A DNA stretch of 38,210 bases, taken from contig FLMG01000032.1 in the NCBI GenBank assembly GCA_900088475.1, positions 1-38,210 on the forward strand. Reading direction: 5' to 3'. Source of the DNA: Hyphochytrium catenoides (lineage: Eukaryota > Protista > Hyphochytriomycota). Below the pieces are notes generated by a model. The model made no database searches, had not been told where the DNA came from, and worked only from the letters and a program-made list of their open reading frames with translations. A program made the position numbers and the translations under genes. Positions 1-35,139 of this stretch are shown here, in pieces. The first letter of the stretch is position 1. Each line of letters begins with the position of its first letter.

Positions 1-3000
1 TGGCGTCAGTCCGATCTATTCTTTAAGGAGGAAAAGGATATTCGAGCCCCTTGGGAAGGCCCGTCGCCTCGAATCCTGTTAGAGAAGGAGGTGTTCGCCC
101 TTACCTGGACGAAAAATTTGATGGTTGTGGCCGACAGAGAGTGGAAGGTCTTCCTGCGCAACCGCGTTTTCGTCTTTATGGAGCTATTCTTAGTTGTTTT
201 TGCTGGACTTCTGTACGGCATTGGCCCGTCGTCATTGTTGGGGTGCTCTTCCTTGGGCTGATGTTTGCCTCTATGGGACAGGCCTCTCAACTGGCAAACA
301 TGTTTGACCAACGGGAGGTGTTTTACAAGCAGCGGCAGATGAACATGATGCGCTCGAGCAACTACGTCTTTGCATGCATGTCAGTAACCCAGATTCCGAT
401 GGCCATGCTGAAGGCTCTAGTCTTTGGGAACATTCTCTATTGGCTAGTGGGCTTTCAAGCAGACGTGGCGTGCTATCTCTACTTTATAGCGATGCTGCTG
501 GTGATGAATGTGACACTGTCACAGTACTTCTTTTTCATATCGTGCGCTTTTCCCAGCCTCACGGCTGCTATGCCTCTGGTGTTCCTGTCAATCCTACTCT
601 TCGTCATGTTCAGTGGCTTTACCATGGCCAAGAACCTGGTACCGGATGGGTGGATCTGGATGTACTACCTGTCACCGATTCAGTGGAGCACTACAGGCCT
701 TGTCTTAAGTCAGTACAAGTCTGAGGGAATGCAACTTTGTGAGCTGGACGGCATTGACTATTGTGCCGCCTTTCACGACTACGCAGGAAATGTCTTTCTG
801 AGACGCATGGGCTTCCCGACAGACGCCAAACTGCGATGGATCGCCTTCATCGTTTTGCTGGGACTGTACCTCTTGTTCGGCACTTTAGCAACACTGGCTC
901 TAGAGTATCTACGACACGCGCCACCCATCTCTCTTAGTGAGGACGCTGAAGGGCTGGAAGAGGCTGAGAAGCAGAAGCAGACCAAGCGCTTTGTGGTAGC
1001 TCCGCAAGTGACGCCTATAAGTTCTGCATTTAGCGCACCAAGCAAAAGCGGAACAACCCAAGACGCCAAGAGGACTGACGATATTATGATCAAGGAGGAC
1101 GAGATAGACCCCAATAAACGGAACAGGCAGGCCATGTTTACGCCCGCGACGCTTAGCTTCAAGGACCTCTGGTACACTGTTAAGGTCAAGACTTCTGCCG
1201 GCCGTTTCTCGGAGGTGGATTTACTTAAGGGCGTGAGTGGGTGCATGAAGCCAGGCACAATGACAGCGCTTATGGGCTCAAGTGGAGCTGGAAAAACTAC
1301 TCTGCTCGACGTCATCGCCTCACGTAAGACTTCCGGGATCATTCGGGGTGATATCTTGATAAACGGCATCCGAGCAGACAGCAAAACCATTCGAAGATGT
1401 ACAGGTTATTGTGAGCAGACGGATATCCACGCCCCAACCATGACTATCCATGAAGCCCTCATCTTCAGTGCCAAGCTTCGGCAAGACAGGTATCTTCGAC
1501 TTGAGGAAAAAATGCGCTCGGTGCAGGAAGCCATCGTACTGCTAGAGTTCCAGGATATCCTGGACTTTGAAGTACGCGCCCTCTCTCCTGAGCAGTCTAA
1601 GCGCCTTACCATTGGCGTTGAGCTGGTAGCAAACCCTGCTATATTGTTCTTGGATGAACCAACGAGTGGACTGGATGCCCGTGCTGCATTTACCATCATG
1701 AAAGGGGTCCGTAATGTTGCTTCAGCGAACCGGACGGTGGTCTGTACTATCCATCAGCCCAGCAGCAATGTCTTCTTCCTATTTGACAGTCTCTTACTGT
1801 TGCGCCGCGGAGGCTCAATGGTATACTTCGGGGCCATTGGAGAGAATGGAAGGTGCTTGATTGACTACCTTGAGGGAATCCCAGGGACTCCTAGCATAAA
1901 GCCTGGCTACAACCCTGCCACTTACATGCTCGAAGTAATTGGGGCAGGCGTGGGCGGTGGCGACAACTCTGGACGACCGGACTACGCGGTTGAATGGACC
2001 AAAAGTCCTGAGAAGCACGAACTGGATGAGGAGCTACGGAGAACTGAGTCCAGGTCATCAGCATCGACAGCAACTGGATCTTCTGGTCATGAAAGCTCCA
2101 AGAAGATCGAGATTAGGGTGAATGCAGCAGCTGCCCCTTCTACCCAGTTCATAGAGCTGTTGAAGAGATTCCTTCGCCTGCACTGGCGAAGTCCACAGTA
2201 TCACTTGCCGCGCTTTTTCGTCTCCGCAATTTTTGCAGCCATCTTTGCAAGCCTGTACGGAGGAACGAACTATCGCAGCTATCAAGGCGCTCTGTCTGGC
2301 AATGGGATGATATATCTTACCTTTTACTTCCTTGCACTGACAATGTTCAACAGCGCTAAGCCTATCATCTATGCAGAAAGGGCCGCTTTCTATCGGGAGC
2401 AGGCATCACGGAGCTATTCCTCGTTCTACTGGTGGCTCTGTCTCTTCGTTACTGAGATCCCTGGATTGTTTGTCTACAACCTGGTCTACCTCGTGATCTT
2501 CTTCCCCAGCGTCGGATTTGTTGGGGTTGAGAACTTCTTCCTCTATTGGTTAACTCAGAGCCTCTTCTCTGTGGCGATGGTGGCCTTTGCGCAGTTACTC
2601 ATCGGGATATTGCCCAATATTGCGGTTGCGGCCGTCTGTGGCACCTTGATTAACATGTTTTTGGGGACCTTTTCTGGCTTCAACCCACCAACAGAGAACA
2701 TCCCTCGTTACCTGCGGTGGCTGATGACCATCATGCCCTCTCGCTATGCCTTTTCGGGCCTTGTTGCTGTCACATTGACCTATTGCTCTCCGGAAGGGGA
2801 AGGAGTTGGATGCTTGGAAGTATGTACAAAGGCGCAGATTGATGCCAAAGAGTGCGTGGCACAACCGCTTCTGATCGACGGACAGCTAACAATGGAATAC
2901 AAGGTGCATCAACTGATGGAGGTCTCCTATGGAATCTATTACGCCGATAGGTTAGTCCTGCAACTGTTGCTTTGCTTGCAAGCTCGTCTCAGCTAGCGAT

Positions 3001-6900: not shown

Positions 6901-8840
6901 GAGTCCCTTGAGGAAAGCACGCTCCTCTGCCGGCATTTGGGAAGGACCTTGATTCACAAAGGACGTTAGTTGGATGATTAGAGAGTTTGCAGCAGCCCGG
7001 CGAACACTCCTGAGAATGGTCAGTCTTGTCGAACGCTCTAAGAAAGTAGAAGAACCATGCATCACATGCCAAGGGACCAAAGCCGAGACGAAGATTGAGG
7101 GAAAGAAAGAGGAGGGATGAAGAGAGACAAGCGAGAGAGGCCCCTGAAGCAGAAGTAATTGTAGTGATTGAACAATAGGAGCAAGCAAGCACTCTCGAAG
7201 CGGAAGGCCAAAAGTTGAGGGAAGAGAAGAGAAGTATGAGGTTTGAGGAGCAGACAGCTGTGATGTTGGCATGATCATGCTGTGTAGAGATAGACTGAGG
7301 CATGCAGAGAAGAGGATCGAGGGTGGCGCAGCGCAGAAGATCTGACGCCAGGGTTCAGGGCGGAGACAACCTGGGAAACCTTCCAAGACAGAGAGACTGA
7401 CCTTTCTTTTGATTTCGCCGAAGGTTTTCCCATACAAGCACAATTTCTCCAAATGACAGCCCTCCATCTACTTCTCTTGGCCTTATCCTGAGCTCACTCT
7501 CAGCCTCGATGAGCTGGGAGAGAGAGCAGGGGCACTCCAGCCTCTGGAACAGCTCTATGACTTTATTCTCACTGAGATGGCCAGCCTTGAGGACGTCAAG
7601 GGTATCATACACTTCTCGGCAGCGCTGTAACATTGCCTTGTTCTTCACAAGATCCTCCTCTTCTTCATCTTCTTCCTCGAACTGAGGAGTCTCGCTTCTA
7701 TCATGTCCCGCTTCTGGTTCTGTCTCGTCCTTGATATGATCCTCTTCCTCCTCCAATCCCACGACTCGTCCCTCCTCGTCCTGGCCTTCCTCCGCATGAG
7801 CGAGAGAGGCTGCCCTCTTCTCACTCTTGCTCTTGCTTTTTTCATTGTTCCGTTCGTCTGCTGAGCCTCTGGTGCTGCTGTGTGACCTTCTTGATTGAGA
7901 GCCACGTTCCGCGAGGCTGCTGACCCCCTTGGACACCTCATCACCCTCCTCGGCGCCTTCCTTCTCGCCCTTACTTGGCTCTTCTGATGGTCGGGGCATC
8001 GCTGTGGCTCCTCCTCCTGAAGAAGGAGAAGCAGTCTCTCCTCCTAAAGGGTGAGAAGAAGAGGAATGCACTGACTGCTTATCCTTTGCTGGAGGGCGCA
8101 CATCTATAGACTCTGCCACTTGTTGTTCTTCGGCAGCTCCTTTTCGGTCCTCCTTCTCACTCTGGCTCACGATGGCCAGACTATCATCCGGTCTTTGAGC
8201 AGCGGAAGGAGAAGATAGCAACAAGGAGGAGGAGGAGGAGGAGGAGGAGGAAGGAGGTAGAGAAGAAGGAGGAGGAGGATGCCGAGGACGTCCTTTAGGA
8301 TCCTGGTTCTCTCTATACTGCTGCGCTCGCATAAAGCTTTTGGGAGCTTCCCAGCTCGATACCCCTGTCCTCCTATTATAATAGTAGTATACGCCTTCGC
8401 GGACACCAAACAGTGTTAGCACAATGGATAGAGAGCAAAGGAAACAATTGAAGATGGAGGGCGAGACGACCAACAGGAGAGACGAACACGGTGAAGCTCG
8501 CTTTCGTGGCAGAGGAGGCAACGGAAGGAGAATGAGTTAGGAGGGTAGCAGCGAATCAAGGACCTATCCGCCTCAGTCTCGGAAGAAAGAGAGACAACCC
8601 GTTGGAAGCGAGAGACTAGTAGCTGTAACATGTTTAGGGATACGATGGCCAAATTGGATGCCCAGCGAGGGGCTCTCTTATACCTGAATCTTCATCAAAG
8701 GCCTGCTGATAGACCTCAGAGGACAAGGCAAAGAGCTGCTTCTTGGCAATGACACCCCTCCAGCGCGCTTGAATCTTCGTAGCTGCAGTCCGCCGCCAGG
8801 TATTATTCGCCTGGTCGGTACCGAGGCCAGTCGTCTCCAT
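3930..8840 (-). CDS. IQ + WW + multi-EF-hand + C-terminal FKBP-type PPIase fusion protein (12 exons, about 789 aa)
   Basis: Exons are 8840-8684, 8394-7402, 7037-6892, 6591-6501, 6312-6158, 5873-5727, 5595-5553, 5344-5254, 5106-4906, 4709-4652, 4453-4306 and 4069-3930. All introns are GT-AG and phase-compatible. Domains: IQ AATKIQARWRG; WW QQAFDEDSG|VYYYYNRRTGVSSWEAP; EF loops DEDGSGEIDLPE and DDDGNGSIDFTE; FKBP GLEVTTLHPGDGKTF..GDHIRVHY..IPGFERGL..LGYG..IPAMATLVMKVELI. Confidence 0.88.
5471..5496. repeat. (AG)n microsatellite in intron 7 of the FKBP-fusion gene
   Basis: A perfect AG dinucleotide run is visible in the sequence. Confidence 0.9.
8225..8280. repeat. (GGA)n-rich repeat encoding a poly-Pro/Ser linker on the minus strand
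   Basis: The ggaggagg... run translates to PPPPSSLPPSSSSSSSS in exon 2. Confidence 0.85.
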
Positions 8841-30625: not shown

Positions 30626-32034
30626 CTAGCTCTTCTTTTTGAAGAAACTCTGAATGCTGCCCTTTTGTGGAGTGGCCTTTCTCTGCGATGGAGGCTGCTT
30701 GGCGTTGGGACCCAGCTTCTTGGCCCCATCGTCAGCACTGGTAAGACCAGGCAGCCCCTTATGAGCTTCGAACGCTTTCCCCGCATCGACGACAGATACT
30801 TCGGCCTCCGCATTCTGTGGTGCAGTTGTTCTGACGTGAAGATGGTGAAGATTTGACAAAAGAAGTGAGCACGTAGGTCACCAGCTTCAATGATCAAACG
30901 ACAGGAGTTCTCACCTGGACTTCTTCGGAACTGGACCTGGCTGTGTCGGACGTGATGGGGTCACCTCTCCTTGGATCCCCGCCTGCTTCTTTTGGAAGAA
31001 GTTATTGATAGGTTGTGTTCCTTCCTTGGTTGTCTCATAGTCAAAATCACGAACGAGGTTTTCTTTGCCGCCCATCCGCTTCGCAATCATGTCGGTGAGT
31101 GTTCGCGCATTCTTCGGGCTCATGCCCTCCGAGTCATTGAGGAAGTAGATGTACTCGTCTCCTTGGCGGCTACATACACGATCGGCAAAGTCCAATAACA
31201 CCTCATCACTATAGTAGGCGTACCAGTTGGTGCTCTCGGTACCGTGCATGAAACGTGTATAGTGCCAAGACGCTGTTGACTCCTTGCATCTGATGAACTC
31301 TGGGTGGTTGCTGATAACCTCTACGATTGGAATGTCATACTGCCGCAGAAGAGCGTATACATCCGCGCAAAACCAATCGATATGTCTGAACTCTATAGCA
31401 ACGCTGTGTCTTGCTGTCATCGTCCCCCTTACAATCTCACAAAAACGGCGAAGCAATTCGTCATCTCTCCCGAGGGATGGTGGCAGTTGCACCAGGATGG
31501 GTCCGAGTTTCTCTTTTAGGCCGTCGGCAGCTCTCTGGGCAAAGAACTTGAAGCTTTCTGCAACATTCAATAGCCGTGCTTCATGGGTGATGTTTCGATT
31601 TAGCTTTAACGAGAAGATGAAGCCCTTCCTAGATTCTTTGTGCCACTTCGCGTAGGTCTGCTCACTCGGCGTCCCATGAAAGCTGTTGTTGATCTCAACG
31701 GTGGGGAAGGACGCTGAAAAGGTTCTGTCATGAGATAAAGGAGGGAGAACGTGGGCGTAAGGCCTTTCCGCATCCAAAACGTGCCATTCAAAGAACCCGG
31801 TGACGAGGCTTACTTGAGCTCTTCGTTCTGTTTAACAGTTTTGGGGTAGAAGACTCCATTTCTCCAATGGGGATAGGTAAACCCTGCTGTTCCGATGTAT
31901 ATCGCCCTTTCACTGACATCTCTCTCTACTCCAAGCTCTGCTGCATTCCTCTCTGAATCAGTGGTGTGTGCCTCCCGCCGGTTCACATTCTCATGGCCAT
32001 CATCTTCAACCTGTTCCGAACCTCGTTTAGCCAT
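30626..32034 (-). CDS. DUF72 (UPF0759, YecE/YunF-like) TIM-barrel protein with a C-terminal tail carrying two PIP-box-like motifs, 3 exons, 411 aa
   Basis: Exons are 32034-31814, 31724-30915 and 30830-30626. DUF72 motifs: IGTAGFTYPHW..FYP, VEINNSFH..P, FSLK..ITHEARL, LGPILVQLPP, AIEFRH..W, YTRFMHG, YIYFLND..PKNA. Tail motifs: TQPINNFFQKK and KGSIQSFFKKKS*. Confidence 0.9.
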
Positions 32035-32316
32035 AGCTCAATCCCAACTCAATGAGACTAATAGTGGGATAAAGGGTTAGGGTTGGGTTAGAGCGTAGCC
32101 TTTAAACGGCCCTCCTTACGGCCCATTGAACAATCTTCAAAGATCTCTGAAGTCTGGAGGACTGAGGGCTGCTGGAGACGCTGTAGCAGGAGGATGAAGT
32201 GCAGATTCTGATGAGTTCGCGCGGGTGAGAGAATCCAAAAGGCAGCGCGGGAATTGCGGTATGATCGGGCCGTATTCTGTATCTGACTGTGCTGATAGAG
32301 GAGAGGAAACATACCC

Positions 32317-33759: not shown

Positions 33760-35139
33760 TCAATAGTAGTGACATTTATGCACAGCTTTACAATGATCCA
33801 ATAAGCCGTTGATCTGGAATAGCCTTGATGATCTGCCGCTTCTGATGATGATACACCTCAAACAATGGACCCTGTCCGATGAGAGTTCATTATAGCATAG
33901 GCATTCATTTTCCCACAGAAACGGACGTCCGTAGCAGCTCCTCTGTGCTACTTGTTTACTGGGAGGGGTATGACGAGCCAAGTAGTGCTGATATATGTCG
34001 TGAACGGTCGGATATATCTCTTGTACTTCAGGCCAGGGTCTACATAGACGGCAGGATAGTGTGACATCACCGCTCATGAGAACCCCTTGCTGAACCAAAA
34101 GGGACCTTTTCTCAGTTGCAGCTATGGCTCGGTGCCTTGCACTTCGATAATCCTCCTCTTCCATCAGATCTTCTTCAACAACCCTTGTTTCCTCTAATAT
34201 TTTGGGAAGAAGTCTCTTGAAAGCAGATTTCTGAAGCTCACTTGCCAGCTTCATCACGTTGCGTTCAAACGTTTTAGTGCCTGCTAGACGCTCTGCAGTC
34301 AGCCGTTTATTAGCTGCTAGACAGAAAGATAGCAGGATAGTGCGACGCATCTTTCGACGCTCATCAGCGTCAATTTTCAGAAACTCTTCCCTCTTGCGCT
34401 TTTTCTCTGCCATTTTCGCTTCATGAAGTCTCTGCTTTCGTTCCAACTCCATTTGCTCTTGTTTTCGCCGATATATAACCTTGGCTTCTTCAATTGAACG
34501 ACCATCAAAGAAAAGTGTCTCGATCATTCTTCGCCAGTAGAATTGGAGATAGTTGCCTTTGACATCAGCTTCTGTTGATGGATACATCTCCAGATCATGC
34601 TTCTGCAAGCCGCATTCGTTCACCAACCGCCAATCCGAGATGGTTTCTCGGCAAAGACAATCCATGCAATAGCGCACAAGAAATTCCCAAGTGACTTTAC
34701 GAATAGCTTTCTTTCCACATGACATACATCCTGTGGTACCCAGCAAACGGAGCAGATCCCGGGGAGCCGCCAACCCTTCGGCCAAAACAAATTCCGCTGT
34801 TCGGACTTGATTGTGCCAGTAATCGGACTTCCCAGTGGAGTTCTGTTTGTAACAGTTCCATGCTAGAGACCAGAGTTCCGTTGCGCGCTCGTCCTCCAAG
34901 AGAAAGGAGAAATACTTGCAAACACAGCTCAATGAATGGAGACTGTGCGGATCCCGATGACTGAGTGAAGCACAGAAGCTAAAGATCAGCCTCCAGACGT
35001 CCTCCGAACACAGCAAGATTCCTTTTGCCCGTATCTTTATGAGGTCTTCTTCCTGGAACTTCGGCTTCGGTCGAAAATACGGTAACAAGCTCGCACGAAA
35101 CTGCTGGCGCTGTAGTCTGGTCGCGGCGTTGATGATCAT
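33760..35139 (-). CDS. Intronless F-box-like protein with an XPA-like C4 zinc module, a charged helix and two C2H2-like zinc fingers (459 aa)
   Basis: F-box-like segment LLCSEDVWRLIFSFC..SLHSLSCVCKYF. XPA-like segment CMSC-x16-CMDC..ISDWRL..GL..DL..LQFYWRRMIE. Fingers CRLC..HYLARH and CLRC..GLLDHCKAVH. The 1,380-nt ORF is uninterrupted. Confidence 0.75.
   Translation of the reverse strand: MIINAATRLQRQQFRASLLPYFRPKPKFQEEDLIKIRAKGILLCSEDVWRLIFSFCASLSHRDPHSLHSLSCVCKYFSFLLEDERATELWSLAWNCYKQNSTGKSDYWHNQVRTAEFVLAEGLAAPRDLLRLLGTTGCMSCGKKAIRKVTWEFLVRYCMDCLCRETISDWRLVNECGLQKHDLEMYPSTEADVKGNYLQFYWRRMIETLFFDGRSIEEAKVIYRRKQEQMELERKQRLHEAKMAEKKRKREEFLKIDADERRKMRRTILLSFCLAANKRLTAERLAGTKTFERNVMKLASELQKSAFKRLLPKILEETRVVEEDLMEEEDYRSARHRAIAATEKRSLLVQQGVLMSGDVTLSCRLCRPWPEVQEIYPTVHDIYQHYLARHTPPSKQVAQRSCYGRPFLWENECLCYNELSSDRVHCLRCIIIRSGRSSRLFQINGLLDHCKAVHKCHYY

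What the first reader, a model, noticed from the sequence alone, without database searches (positions are those of the whole stretch)
30626..32034. Bacterial-type DUF72 TIM-barrel domesticated in a eukaryote, with two PCNA-interaction (PIP-like) motifs: candidate undescribed replication-coupled DNA-repair enzyme
Seen in sequence: a complete DUF72 domain interrupted by two spliceosomal introns (31725-31813 and 30831-30914), so this is a genuine nuclear gene rather than contamination. A low-complexity tail follows the domain, with TQPINNFFQKK (about 30985-31020) and a terminal QKGSIQSFFKKKS* on its own exon, which the ORF track splits off. Both fit the hydrophobic-x-x-F-F core of PIP boxes followed by basic residues, although the canonical Q is shifted by one position in each. 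Established: DUF72 is a mainly prokaryotic TIM-barrel family with proposed kinship to endonuclease IV-type AP endonucleases, and it occurs in DNA-repair/SOS gene neighbourhoods. C-terminal PIP boxes tether repair enzymes to PCNA. Inference: a probably horizontally acquired enzyme has been wired to PCNA, which would also give a functional handle on an uncharacterised family.
Basis: partly seen in the sequence, partly recalled or inferred. Interest (0 to 1): 0.82.

Follow-up and report, generated by a model that had tools for sequence, protein, structure and literature searches.

The report
Eukaryotic DUF72 enzyme with clamp-docking tail
This is a real three-exon nuclear gene for an enzyme of unknown function (DUF72), and it belongs to a previously undescribed, widespread eukaryotic branch whose floppy tails all keep short "FF" motifs that look like docking sites for the DNA sliding clamp PCNA, which points to a role at replicating or damaged DNA.

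Summary
On the minus strand, three exons (32034-31814, 31724-30915, 30830-30626) joined by two GT-AG introns encode a 411-aa protein. It has a complete DUF72 domain (Pfam E 1.6e-46) and a 122-aa low-complexity tail with TQPINNFFQKK and a terminal QKGSIQSFFKKKS*.

An exhaustive HMMER search found 26 tailed relatives, including choanoflagellates, red and green algae, a diatom, a xanthophyte and Thecamonas.
- All 26 carry an FF-type motif in the tail.
- 25 have a proximal one (13-54 aa after the domain).
- 20 have one 2-12 aa from the C-terminus, consensus K-G-[ST]-[IL]-x-x-F-F-x-K-K.
- Similar motifs occur in 7 of 243 non-clade proteins.

With the window protein they form one clade (bootstrap 99-100). 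So this is an old eukaryotic lineage, not a recent bacterial import.

A third, SUMO-interaction-like acidic/V-rich motif recurs in 8 of 27.

PCNA binding is inferred only. The fold sits in the xylose-isomerase-like TIM-barrel superfamily, no nearer to endonuclease IV than to sugar epimerases. The proximal motif may dock onto the domain in cis. No RNA run was listed, so intron 2 rests on homology.

I found no paper linking eukaryotic DUF72 to PCNA. The scan had already noted this same stretch as s1-357107; I found no note of it on other DNA.

The parts
31814..32034 (-). Exon 1: ATG at 32034, a 42-aa acidic non-conserved N-terminal extension, then the first strand of the DUF72 domain (AIYIGTAGFTYPHWRNGVFYP...EEL, split codon K74)
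   Evidence: colinear with the N-termini of bacterial DUF72 proteins
31725..31813 (-). Intron 1, 89 nt, GTAAGC...ACAG, phase 2, inside the DUF72 domain
   Evidence: Retention gives a stop directly after ELK. Removal restores a gap-free alignment to homologues
30915..31724 (-). Exon 2: the rest of the DUF72 TIM barrel plus the first 55 residues of the tail
   Evidence: Pfam PF01904 E 1.6e-46; PDB 1VPQ E 2e-7; AF2 model pLDDT >90 over the domain
31079..31908 (-). DUF72 domain, residues 43-289 (interrupted by intron 1). It keeps the family-invariant residues E84, N86, K114, H121, Q153, E185, R187, W191, R231, N270, D271
   Evidence: These match the TM1631 site residues listed in PMC3828134. Structural match to 1VPY/1VPQ at Z 21.5/19.8
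30986..31018 (-). Proximal FF motif TQPINNFFQKK (residues 310-320; I313 lies 23 residues after the domain end)
   Evidence: A positionally equivalent motif sits 13-54 aa after the domain end in 25 of 26 relatives. There is a short low-confidence helix in the window model. The equivalent segment in orthologue P0122 has pLDDT 72-84
30831..30914 (-). Intron 2, 84 nt, GTGAGA...GTCAG, phase 2, in the tail
   Evidence: It is the only in-phase GT..AG pair. Retention ends the protein at ..KKSR*. No RNA evidence is available
30626..30830 (-). Exon 3: the last 67 residues of the tail plus stop TAG (30626-30628)
   Evidence: It encodes two motifs shared with orthologues
30785..30808 (-). SIM-like element EAEVSVVD (residues 352-359): a V-rich core with acidic flanks
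   Evidence: Similar elements occur in 8 of 27 clade members against 0.4 expected from shuffled tails
30629..30667 (-). Distal, C-terminal FF motif QKGSIQSFFKKKS (residues 399-411)
   Evidence: 20 of 26 relatives have [ILMV]xx[FY][FYL] 2-12 residues from their C-terminus, with consensus K-G-[ST]-[IL]-x-x-F-F-x-K-K

Best explanation
The locus is an intact three-exon nuclear gene for a 411-aa protein. It is a catalytically intact-looking DUF72 TIM barrel followed by a disordered, Lys-rich tail.

The gene belongs to an old, monophyletic eukaryotic DUF72 lineage. The tails of that lineage are unconserved except for short motifs:
- a proximal [ST]-[IL]-x-x-[FM]-F, usually about 20-35 residues after the domain;
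- a distal K-G-[ST]-[IL]-x-x-F-F-x-K-K at the very C-terminus;
- in a subset (the window protein included), an acidic V/I-rich SIM-like element.

The most likely working model: the terminal FF motif, and perhaps the proximal one, inserts into the hydrophobic pocket of PCNA in the manner of Pol32/POLD3-, RNase H2B- or Pol kappa-type PIP-like boxes. This would bring the DUF72 enzyme to replication forks or repair patches, where it would act on a nucleic-acid substrate. SUMO may add to recruitment.

Shown: the gene model (intron 1 by homology, intron 2 by phase and motif conservation), the domain, retention of the active-site residues, motif conservation, and clade monophyly.

Inferred: PCNA as the partner, DNA as the substrate, nuclear location.
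For: Gene model.

Domain and fold: DUF72 at E 1.6e-46; model matches DUF72 crystal structures at Z 21.5 and 19.8.

Active site: the invariant family residues and all TM1631 site equivalents are kept.

Relatives: exhaustive HMMER found tailed relatives at 35-44% identity. Named members are Salpingoeca urceolata, Savillea parva, Gracilaria changii, Agarophyton chilense, Coscinodiscus wailesii, Thecamonas trahens, Pycnococcus/Pseudoscourfieldia and Tribonema minus.

Motifs: present in 27 of 27 clade members, terminal in 21 counting the window, against 7 of 243 non-clade proteins. Position counts for the distal motif: pos 4 I/L/M/V 21 of 21, pos 7 F/Y 21 of 21, pos 8 F 20 of 21, pos 10-11 K. Flank net charge is positive in 19 of 21 (distal) and 24 of 26 (proximal).

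Phylogeny: the clade is one side of a branch with UFBoot/SH-aLRT 99-100/99.

Literature: 34% of 77 validated PCNA motifs lack Q at position 1; position 1 tolerates K, G and P; positive flanks raise affinity (PMC6881253). Pol iota and Pol kappa use Q-less PIP-like motifs in the same cleft (PMC7145657). Prokaryotic DUF72 genes are enriched next to polB2 damage-response operons (PMC11791011).

SIM-like element: 8 of 27 members against 0.4 expected.
Against: - No binding data and no complex model could be made here.
- Neither motif has the canonical Q at position 1.
- PIP-like FF motifs are known to cross-react with Rev1 and Mlh1, so the partner is not determined.
- The fold does not favour DNA. 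Sugar epimerases and isomerases score the same as endonuclease IV (Z 11-12.8), and DUF72 crystals lack the EndoIV metal cluster (PMC3828134).
- The proximal motif sits at a near-constant distance from the domain. It is modelled with pLDDT 72-84 in orthologue P0122, which suggests an ordered or cis-docked segment.
- There is no RNA evidence for intron 2.
- Some clade members come from transcriptomes or metagenomes whose taxonomic purity I could not check.
Confidence: 0.58

Rival explanations
1. The FF motifs are real docking motifs, but for another hub that reads PIP-like FF peptides (Rev1 C-terminal domain, Mlh1 C-terminal domain, or an unknown partner) rather than PCNA. The protein would still be part of DNA damage tolerance or repair.
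For: ELM groups PIP, RIR and MIP as related FF-centred motifs with documented cross-binding (PMC7145657). An S-F-F core followed by K/A occurs in both motifs. The canonical Q is absent.
Against: In most relatives only 2-5 residues follow the terminal FF. From my knowledge of RIR structures, that is short for the helix that follows FF in RIR peptides. An extreme C-terminal position with basic residues is typical of Pol32/POLD3-type PIP boxes (my knowledge). The residue before S-F-F is not the basic one of the MIP box.
Confidence: 0.15
2. The proximal motif is not a free docking motif. It is part of a clade-specific ordered C-terminal extension that packs onto the TIM barrel, either structurally or as an autoinhibitory lid. 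Only the terminal motif would then be a true short linear motif.
For: The spacing from the domain end is nearly constant (13-39 aa in most relatives), with an aromatic residue (mostly W; F/Y in the window) about 10-14 residues upstream in many members. In the AF2 model of orthologue P0122, built with a clade-only alignment, residues 312-348 have pLDDT 72-84 while the rest of the tail is below 50. An earlier scan note on another gene of this genome (s1-333891) found that a supposed PIP box was a structural strand.
Against: In the window model the same segment has pLDDT 51-62. The motif has the same I/L-x-x-F/M-F pattern and basic flanks as the terminal one. No coordinates or PAE were available to show a contact.
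Confidence: 0.35
3. DUF72 is a small-molecule (sugar or sugar-phosphate) enzyme. The basic tail serves nuclear import or some unrelated interaction, with no link to DNA metabolism.
For: The nearest non-DUF72 structures are mostly sugar epimerases and isomerases. No DUF72 activity has been shown experimentally in the papers found.
Against: Selective conservation of FF motifs of PIP type, with a SIM-like element, in otherwise free-drifting tails. Prokaryotic gene-neighbourhood links to damage-response operons. Computational DNA-binding predictions for TM1631.
Confidence: 0.15
4. A recent horizontal transfer from bacteria into this organism, or bacterial contamination of the assembly.
For: The family is overwhelmingly prokaryotic: 5154 hits, mostly proteins of about 245 aa.
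Against: Two spliceosomal introns and eukaryotic neighbours (ABCG/PDR transporter, LRR-IQ, EF-hand). The protein nests inside a 27-member eukaryotic clade with 99-100% support, and its best identity (45%) is to a choanoflagellate protein.
Confidence: 0.03

Closest known systems
DUF72 / YecE / UPF0759 family (Pfam PF01904; structures 1VPQ TM1631, 1VPY and 1ZTV EF0366)
   Same: Full-length domain match, the same TIM-barrel fold (Z about 20-21.5), and all family-invariant polar residues kept.
   Different: Prokaryotic members are proteins of about 245 aa without tails. This protein and its eukaryotic clade add a 90-260-aa disordered tail with conserved FF motifs and have clade-specific sequence signatures (FHG.P, WFC, VEN..PD.S). 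The function of the family is unknown.
C-terminal PIP-box enzymes and subunits (Pol32/POLD3, RNase H2B, FEN1, Pol eta/kappa/iota PIP-like boxes)
   Same: [ST]-[IL]-x-x-F-F in a disordered, basic, extreme C-terminal tail. K or G instead of Q at position 1, as in Pol kappa and Pol iota. More than one motif per protein, as in TLS polymerases.
   Different: No canonical Q. Binding is untested. The attached catalytic domain is an uncharacterised TIM barrel rather than a known nuclease or polymerase.
Endonuclease IV / UVDE (AP endonuclease 2, xylose-isomerase-like TIM barrels)
   Same: The same superfamily fold (EndoIV Z 11.3-12.1; SacUVDE Foldseek E 4e-3). Both have been proposed to work on damaged DNA.
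   Different: No sequence-level membership (no Pfam hit). No closer than sugar epimerases. DUF72 crystals lack the three-metal site (PMC3828134).
Srs2-type tandem PIP-like + SIM receptors for SUMO-PCNA
   Same: A PIP-like motif and an acidic-flanked hydrophobic SIM-like element lie together in a disordered C-terminal tail (window protein and 7 relatives).
   Different: Here the SIM-like element lies 40-50 residues upstream of the terminal FF motif, or at the very C-terminus in some relatives. It is present in only about a third of the clade and is untested.

Membership tests
DUF72 (PF01904) | Pfam HMM score above the gathering cut-off over the full profile | tested here: met
   159.5 bits against a cut-off of 25.3, profile positions 15-217 on exon 2. 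Exon 1 supplies positions 1-14.
DUF72 (PF01904) | Conserved polar site residues (TM1631 Glu42/Asn44/Lys72/Gln114/Glu143/Arg145/Arg191/Asn239 equivalents) | tested here: met
   E84, N86, K114, Q153, E185, R187, R231, N270 are present.
DUF72 (PF01904) | TIM-barrel fold matching the solved DUF72 structures | tested here: met
   AF2 model pLDDT 88. 1VPY: Z 21.5, rmsd 2.6 over 211 residues. 1VPQ: Z 19.8.
Canonical PIP box (Q-x-x-[ILM]-x-x-[FY]-[FY]) | Gln at position 1 | tested here: not met
   Position 1 is T (proximal) and K (distal) in the window protein. Across the clade it is K/Q/V (distal) and K/P/A (proximal).
PIP-like motifs (broad sense, PMC6881253) | Aliphatic residue at position 4 and an aromatic pair at positions 7-8 | tested here: met
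   I313..F316 F317 and I403..F406 F407. The clade keeps these in 21 of 21 distal motifs.
PIP-like motifs (broad sense, PMC6881253) | Lies in a disordered region with positively charged flanks | tested here: met
   The tail is low-complexity with pLDDT 51-62. Mean flank net charge is +2.0 (proximal) and +2.6 (distal).
PIP-like motifs (broad sense, PMC6881253) | Physical binding to the PCNA interdomain-connector pocket | not testable with these tools
   No multimer modelling or wet assay was available.
Endonuclease IV / AP_endonuc_2 | Sequence membership (Pfam AP_endonuc_2) and a metal-binding His/Asp/Glu cluster | tested here: not met
   No such Pfam hit at E<=1. There is only a superfamily-level structural tie. 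DUF72 crystals are metal-free per PMC3828134.
SUMO-interacting motif | Core of 3-4 V/I/L residues flanked by acidic residues, in a disordered region | tested here: met
   EAEVSVVD, residues 352-359. Recurs in 8 of 27 clade members against 0.4 expected. Binding is untested.

The most novel reading that the evidence does not exclude
Eukaryotic DUF72 proteins are an ancient, so far unrecognised class of PCNA-tethered (and in part SUMO-PCNA-tethered) DNA-repair enzymes. Their conserved twin FF motifs would give the first experimental handle on what the whole DUF72/YecE family does, 20 years after its structures were solved.
Probability: 0.35. Interest if true: 0.8.

Novelty: new variant of a known kind. 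Interest (0 to 1): 0.66.

Why it matters
DUF72/YecE is a large family. This search found 5154 relatives at E<=0.001, and crystal structures have existed since 2004, yet no function has been demonstrated. Hints so far are computational (EndoIV-like DNA binding) or come from gene neighbourhood (polB2 and SOS-type operons).

A monophyletic eukaryotic branch has fixed PIP-like FF motifs, and often a SIM-like element, on otherwise free-drifting tails. That is independent, evolution-based evidence that the enzyme works at PCNA-marked DNA. It also turns the question into simple experiments: peptide-PCNA binding, FF>AA mutants, damage sensitivity, and nuclease assays. Several culturable protists and algae carry the gene.

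For annotation, these genes should be modelled with their terminal exon.

Tried and rejected
- RNA evidence: the look-up of sequencing runs listed no run, so read laying could not be used.
- Exact-protein look-up of a neighbouring ORF, to identify the genome, found nothing.
- The organism remains unidentified. Its ABCG transporter is closest to oomycete PDR transporters, but only at 40-45% identity.
- The word-index search with exon 2 found only prokaryote-like short forms. The exhaustive search was needed to see the eukaryotic clade.
- The profile word search was capped at 8000 candidates and added only two further tailed members (P0427, P0428).
- The contig of the nearest relative, P0273, gave no DNA.
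- Fold searches could not separate a DNA enzyme from a sugar enzyme.
- The bacterial promoter/terminator scan was uninformative.
- I looked for clamp-binding motifs on the prokaryote-like relatives and found essentially none (7 of 243 loose matches).
- Literature searches for YecE, TM1631, UPF0759, YunF, PF01904 and DUF72+PCNA found no functional study and no prior note of the eukaryotic tail motifs.
- The full spliced protein could not be handed to the fold or search tools by reference, so exon 2 and orthologue P0122 were modelled instead.
- Recent HGT and contamination were considered and rejected on introns, neighbours and the tree.

Full report
**1. What is in the sequence**

Reading 32300-30400 on the minus strand, together with the ORF list and a splice reconstruction, gives a three-exon gene.
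- Exon 1 is 32034-31814, with the ATG at 32034.
- Intron 1 is 31813-31725 (89 nt, GTAAGC..ACAG).
- Exon 2 is 31724-30915.
- Intron 2 is 30914-30831 (84 nt, GTGAGA..GTCAG).
- Exon 3 is 30830-30626, with stop TAG at 30628-30626.

The joined CDS is 1236 nt and encodes 411 aa. Both junction codons are split 2+1 (AA|A = K74, AG|A = R344). Retaining either intron gives a stop at once.

The only correction is that intron 1 alone interrupts the domain; intron 2 lies in the tail.

**2. The domain**

Exon 2 alone scores E 1.6e-46 on Pfam DUF72, covering profile positions 15-217 of 217. It matches the solved DUF72 protein TM1631 (1VPQ) at E 2e-7.

Exon 1 supplies the missing first strand. In an alignment of the spliced protein with 22 prokaryote-like homologues, the exon 1/2 junction is colinear without a gap. 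Intron 1 is therefore confirmed by homology.

The family-invariant and near-invariant positions are all present: E84, N86, K114, H121, Q153, E185, R187, W191, R231, N270, D271. They correspond to the TM1631 site residues listed by Konc et al. (PMC3828134).

An AF2 model of exon 2 has pLDDT above 90 over the barrel. It superposes on DUF72 crystal structures at Z 21.5 (1VPY) and 19.8 (1VPQ).

**3. How close to DNA-repair TIM barrels?**

Below the DUF72 structures there is a plateau at Z 11-12.8. It mixes sugar epimerases and isomerases, MbnB, endonuclease IV (5ZHZ 12.1, 3AAM 11.3) and the ASFV AP endonuclease (11.7). Foldseek ranks SacUVDE only 28th. There is no Pfam AP_endonuc_2 hit.

The protein is therefore in the xylose-isomerase-like superfamily, but the fold does not say whether the substrate is DNA. 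The papers found contain no experimental function for DUF72. They offer only computational DNA-binding proposals (PMC3828134, PMC4939058) and an enrichment next to polB2 damage-response operons (PMC11791011).

**4. The tail and its relatives**

The word-index search found only short (about 245 aa) prokaryote-like proteins at 35-41% identity, and none covered the tail.

The exhaustive HMMER search changed the picture. Its top hits are proteins of 270-520 aa, each a DUF72 domain followed by a long low-complexity tail. Cluster look-ups name:
- the choanoflagellates Salpingoeca urceolata and Savillea parva;
- the red algae Gracilaria changii and Agarophyton chilense;
- the diatom Coscinodiscus wailesii;
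- the apusomonad Thecamonas trahens (XP_013755465.1);
- the green algae Pycnococcus and Pseudoscourfieldia;
- the xanthophyte Tribonema minus.

In all 26 relatives the tail carries at least one [ILMV]xx[FYML][FYL] motif.
- A proximal copy sits 13-54 residues after the domain end in 25 of them (the window protein: +23).
- In 20 a copy lies 2-12 residues from the C-terminus.
- The terminal consensus is K-G-[ST]-[IL]-x-x-F-F-x-K-K, for example PQKGSIAAFFKK*, KKGSITDFFSKKT* and GKGSILSFFSKK*. The window protein ends PQKGSIQSFFKKKS*.
- Distal position counts: aliphatic at position 4 in 21 of 21, F/Y at position 7 in 21 of 21, F at position 8 in 20 of 21.
- Flanks are net positive in 19 of 21 (distal) and 24 of 26 (proximal).
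- Between the motifs the tails are unalignable, and their length varies from about 90 to 260 residues.
- Only 7 of 243 non-clade proteins have anything similar after the domain.
- Shuffling the window tail gives two motifs in 0.05% of trials.

It also gives strong indirect support for exon 3 and intron 2.

**5. Phylogeny**

A careful IQ-TREE analysis (89 rows, 250 columns, LG+C20+F+G4 PMSF) puts the 27 tailed proteins, the window protein included, on one side of a branch with UFBoot/SH-aLRT 99-100/99. The window protein lies in a six-member subclade with P0186 and the red-algal group (97/88). Its best identity is 45%, to the Salpingoeca protein.

A fern protein (Adiantum) and its relatives have an N-terminal Lys/Arg-rich extension instead of the FF tail. 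They nest among bacterial sequences, so they are a separate eukaryotic lineage.

The tree is unrooted and no bacterial sister group is resolved. It shows a single origin of the tailed architecture and a wide spread across eukaryotic supergroups. It does not show a recent transfer into this organism. The branching inside the clade does not follow organismal phylogeny everywhere (the two choanoflagellates are apart). I do not interpret that, because several members come from transcriptomes and metagenomes.

**6. What the motifs most likely do**

The motifs fit PIP-like boxes in every respect except the canonical Gln. According to Prestel et al. (PMC6881253):
- 34% of 77 validated PCNA-binding motifs lack that Gln;
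- position 1 is the most permissive and accepts K, G and P;
- positive charge within +/-5 residues raises affinity.

ELM notes that Pol iota and Pol kappa use Q-less PIP-like motifs in the same PCNA cleft, and that PIP, RIR and MIP motifs are related and can cross-bind (PMC7145657).

From my own knowledge, the extreme C-terminal placement with a basic end resembles Pol32/POLD3 and RNase H2B.

I therefore rate PCNA as the most likely partner (about 0.55-0.6), with another FF-reading repair hub as the main alternative.

**7. A caveat on the proximal motif**

The proximal motif keeps a near-constant distance from the domain, with an aromatic residue (mostly W) upstream. In the AF2 model of orthologue P0122, built from a clade-only alignment, residues 312-348 have pLDDT 72-84 while the rest of the tail is below 50. 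In the window model the equivalent segment scores 51-62.

Coordinates and PAE were not available. I cannot tell whether this segment docks on the barrel in cis. That prompted this check.

**8. A third motif**

Eight of 27 clade members, the window protein included (EAEVSVVD, residues 352-359, exon 3), have an acidic-flanked V/I/L run of SUMO-interaction type. Shuffled tails predict 0.4. In several relatives it is the very C-terminus (EVIILD*, EVVVLD*).

PIP-like plus SIM recalls the recruitment of Srs2 by SUMO-PCNA (PMC3594751, PMC3439891; titles and abstracts only). This is a lead, not a finding.

**9. Context and limits**

The neighbours are eukaryotic: an ABCG/PDR transporter, LRR-IQ and EF-hand proteins. 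The transporter is nearest to oomycete PDRs, but only at 40-45% identity. The organism is an unsampled protist, possibly a stramenopile.

No RNA run was listed. No look-up found the genome's own proteins.

The scan had already noted this same stretch as s1-357107; I found no note of it on other DNA.

No paper in the library links DUF72 with PCNA in eukaryotes. Absence from that library is not proof of novelty.

**10. Verdict**

The PIP-like reading is strengthened by strong conservation. The 'recent bacterial domestication' reading is replaced by membership of an old eukaryotic clade. The EndoIV kinship holds only at superfamily level.

The finding is a new variant of known kinds (the DUF72 family; PIP-tethered enzymes) and gives a concrete, testable handle on an uncharacterised family.

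Noticed in passing
window 30785-30808 (minus), and relatives P0122, P0123, P0127, P0128, P0181, P0253, P0275: An acidic-flanked V/I/L run resembling a SUMO-interacting motif recurs in the tails of about a third of the tailed DUF72 clade (8 of 27 against 0.4 expected). In some relatives it is the very C-terminus.
   Followed up: partly
P0195 (Adiantum nelumboides) and the P0209 cluster: A second eukaryotic DUF72 lineage (fern/plant type) has an N-terminal Lys/Arg-rich, NLS-like extension and no FF tail. It nests among bacterial sequences in the tree, apart from the tailed clade.
   Followed up: partly
window 32074-32090 (minus strand, about 40-55 nt upstream of the ATG): A telomere-repeat-like element TAACCCAACCCTAACCC sits just upstream of the DUF72 start codon. 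It occurs only once in the window. It resembles plant 'telo-box' promoter elements (my recollection, untested).
   Followed up: partly
window 51-2996 (+): A long intron-free ORF runs off the window start and encodes a full-size ABCG/PDR-type transporter. Its closest named relatives are oomycete PDR transporters, at only 40-45% identity. This hints that the genome is from a poorly sampled protist.
   Followed up: partly
window 33760-35139 (-): A 459-aa ATG-started ORF lies directly upstream of the DUF72 gene on the same strand. It has no Pfam hit at E<=0.01 and no exact match in the protein collection. Another scan note calls it F-box/XPA-like. The two genes are in tandem, not divergent.
   Followed up: no
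tree: Inside the tailed clade the two choanoflagellate sequences do not group together (Savillea sits with a diatom). This could reflect paralogy, eukaryote-to-eukaryote transfer or transcriptome cross-contamination.
   Followed up: no
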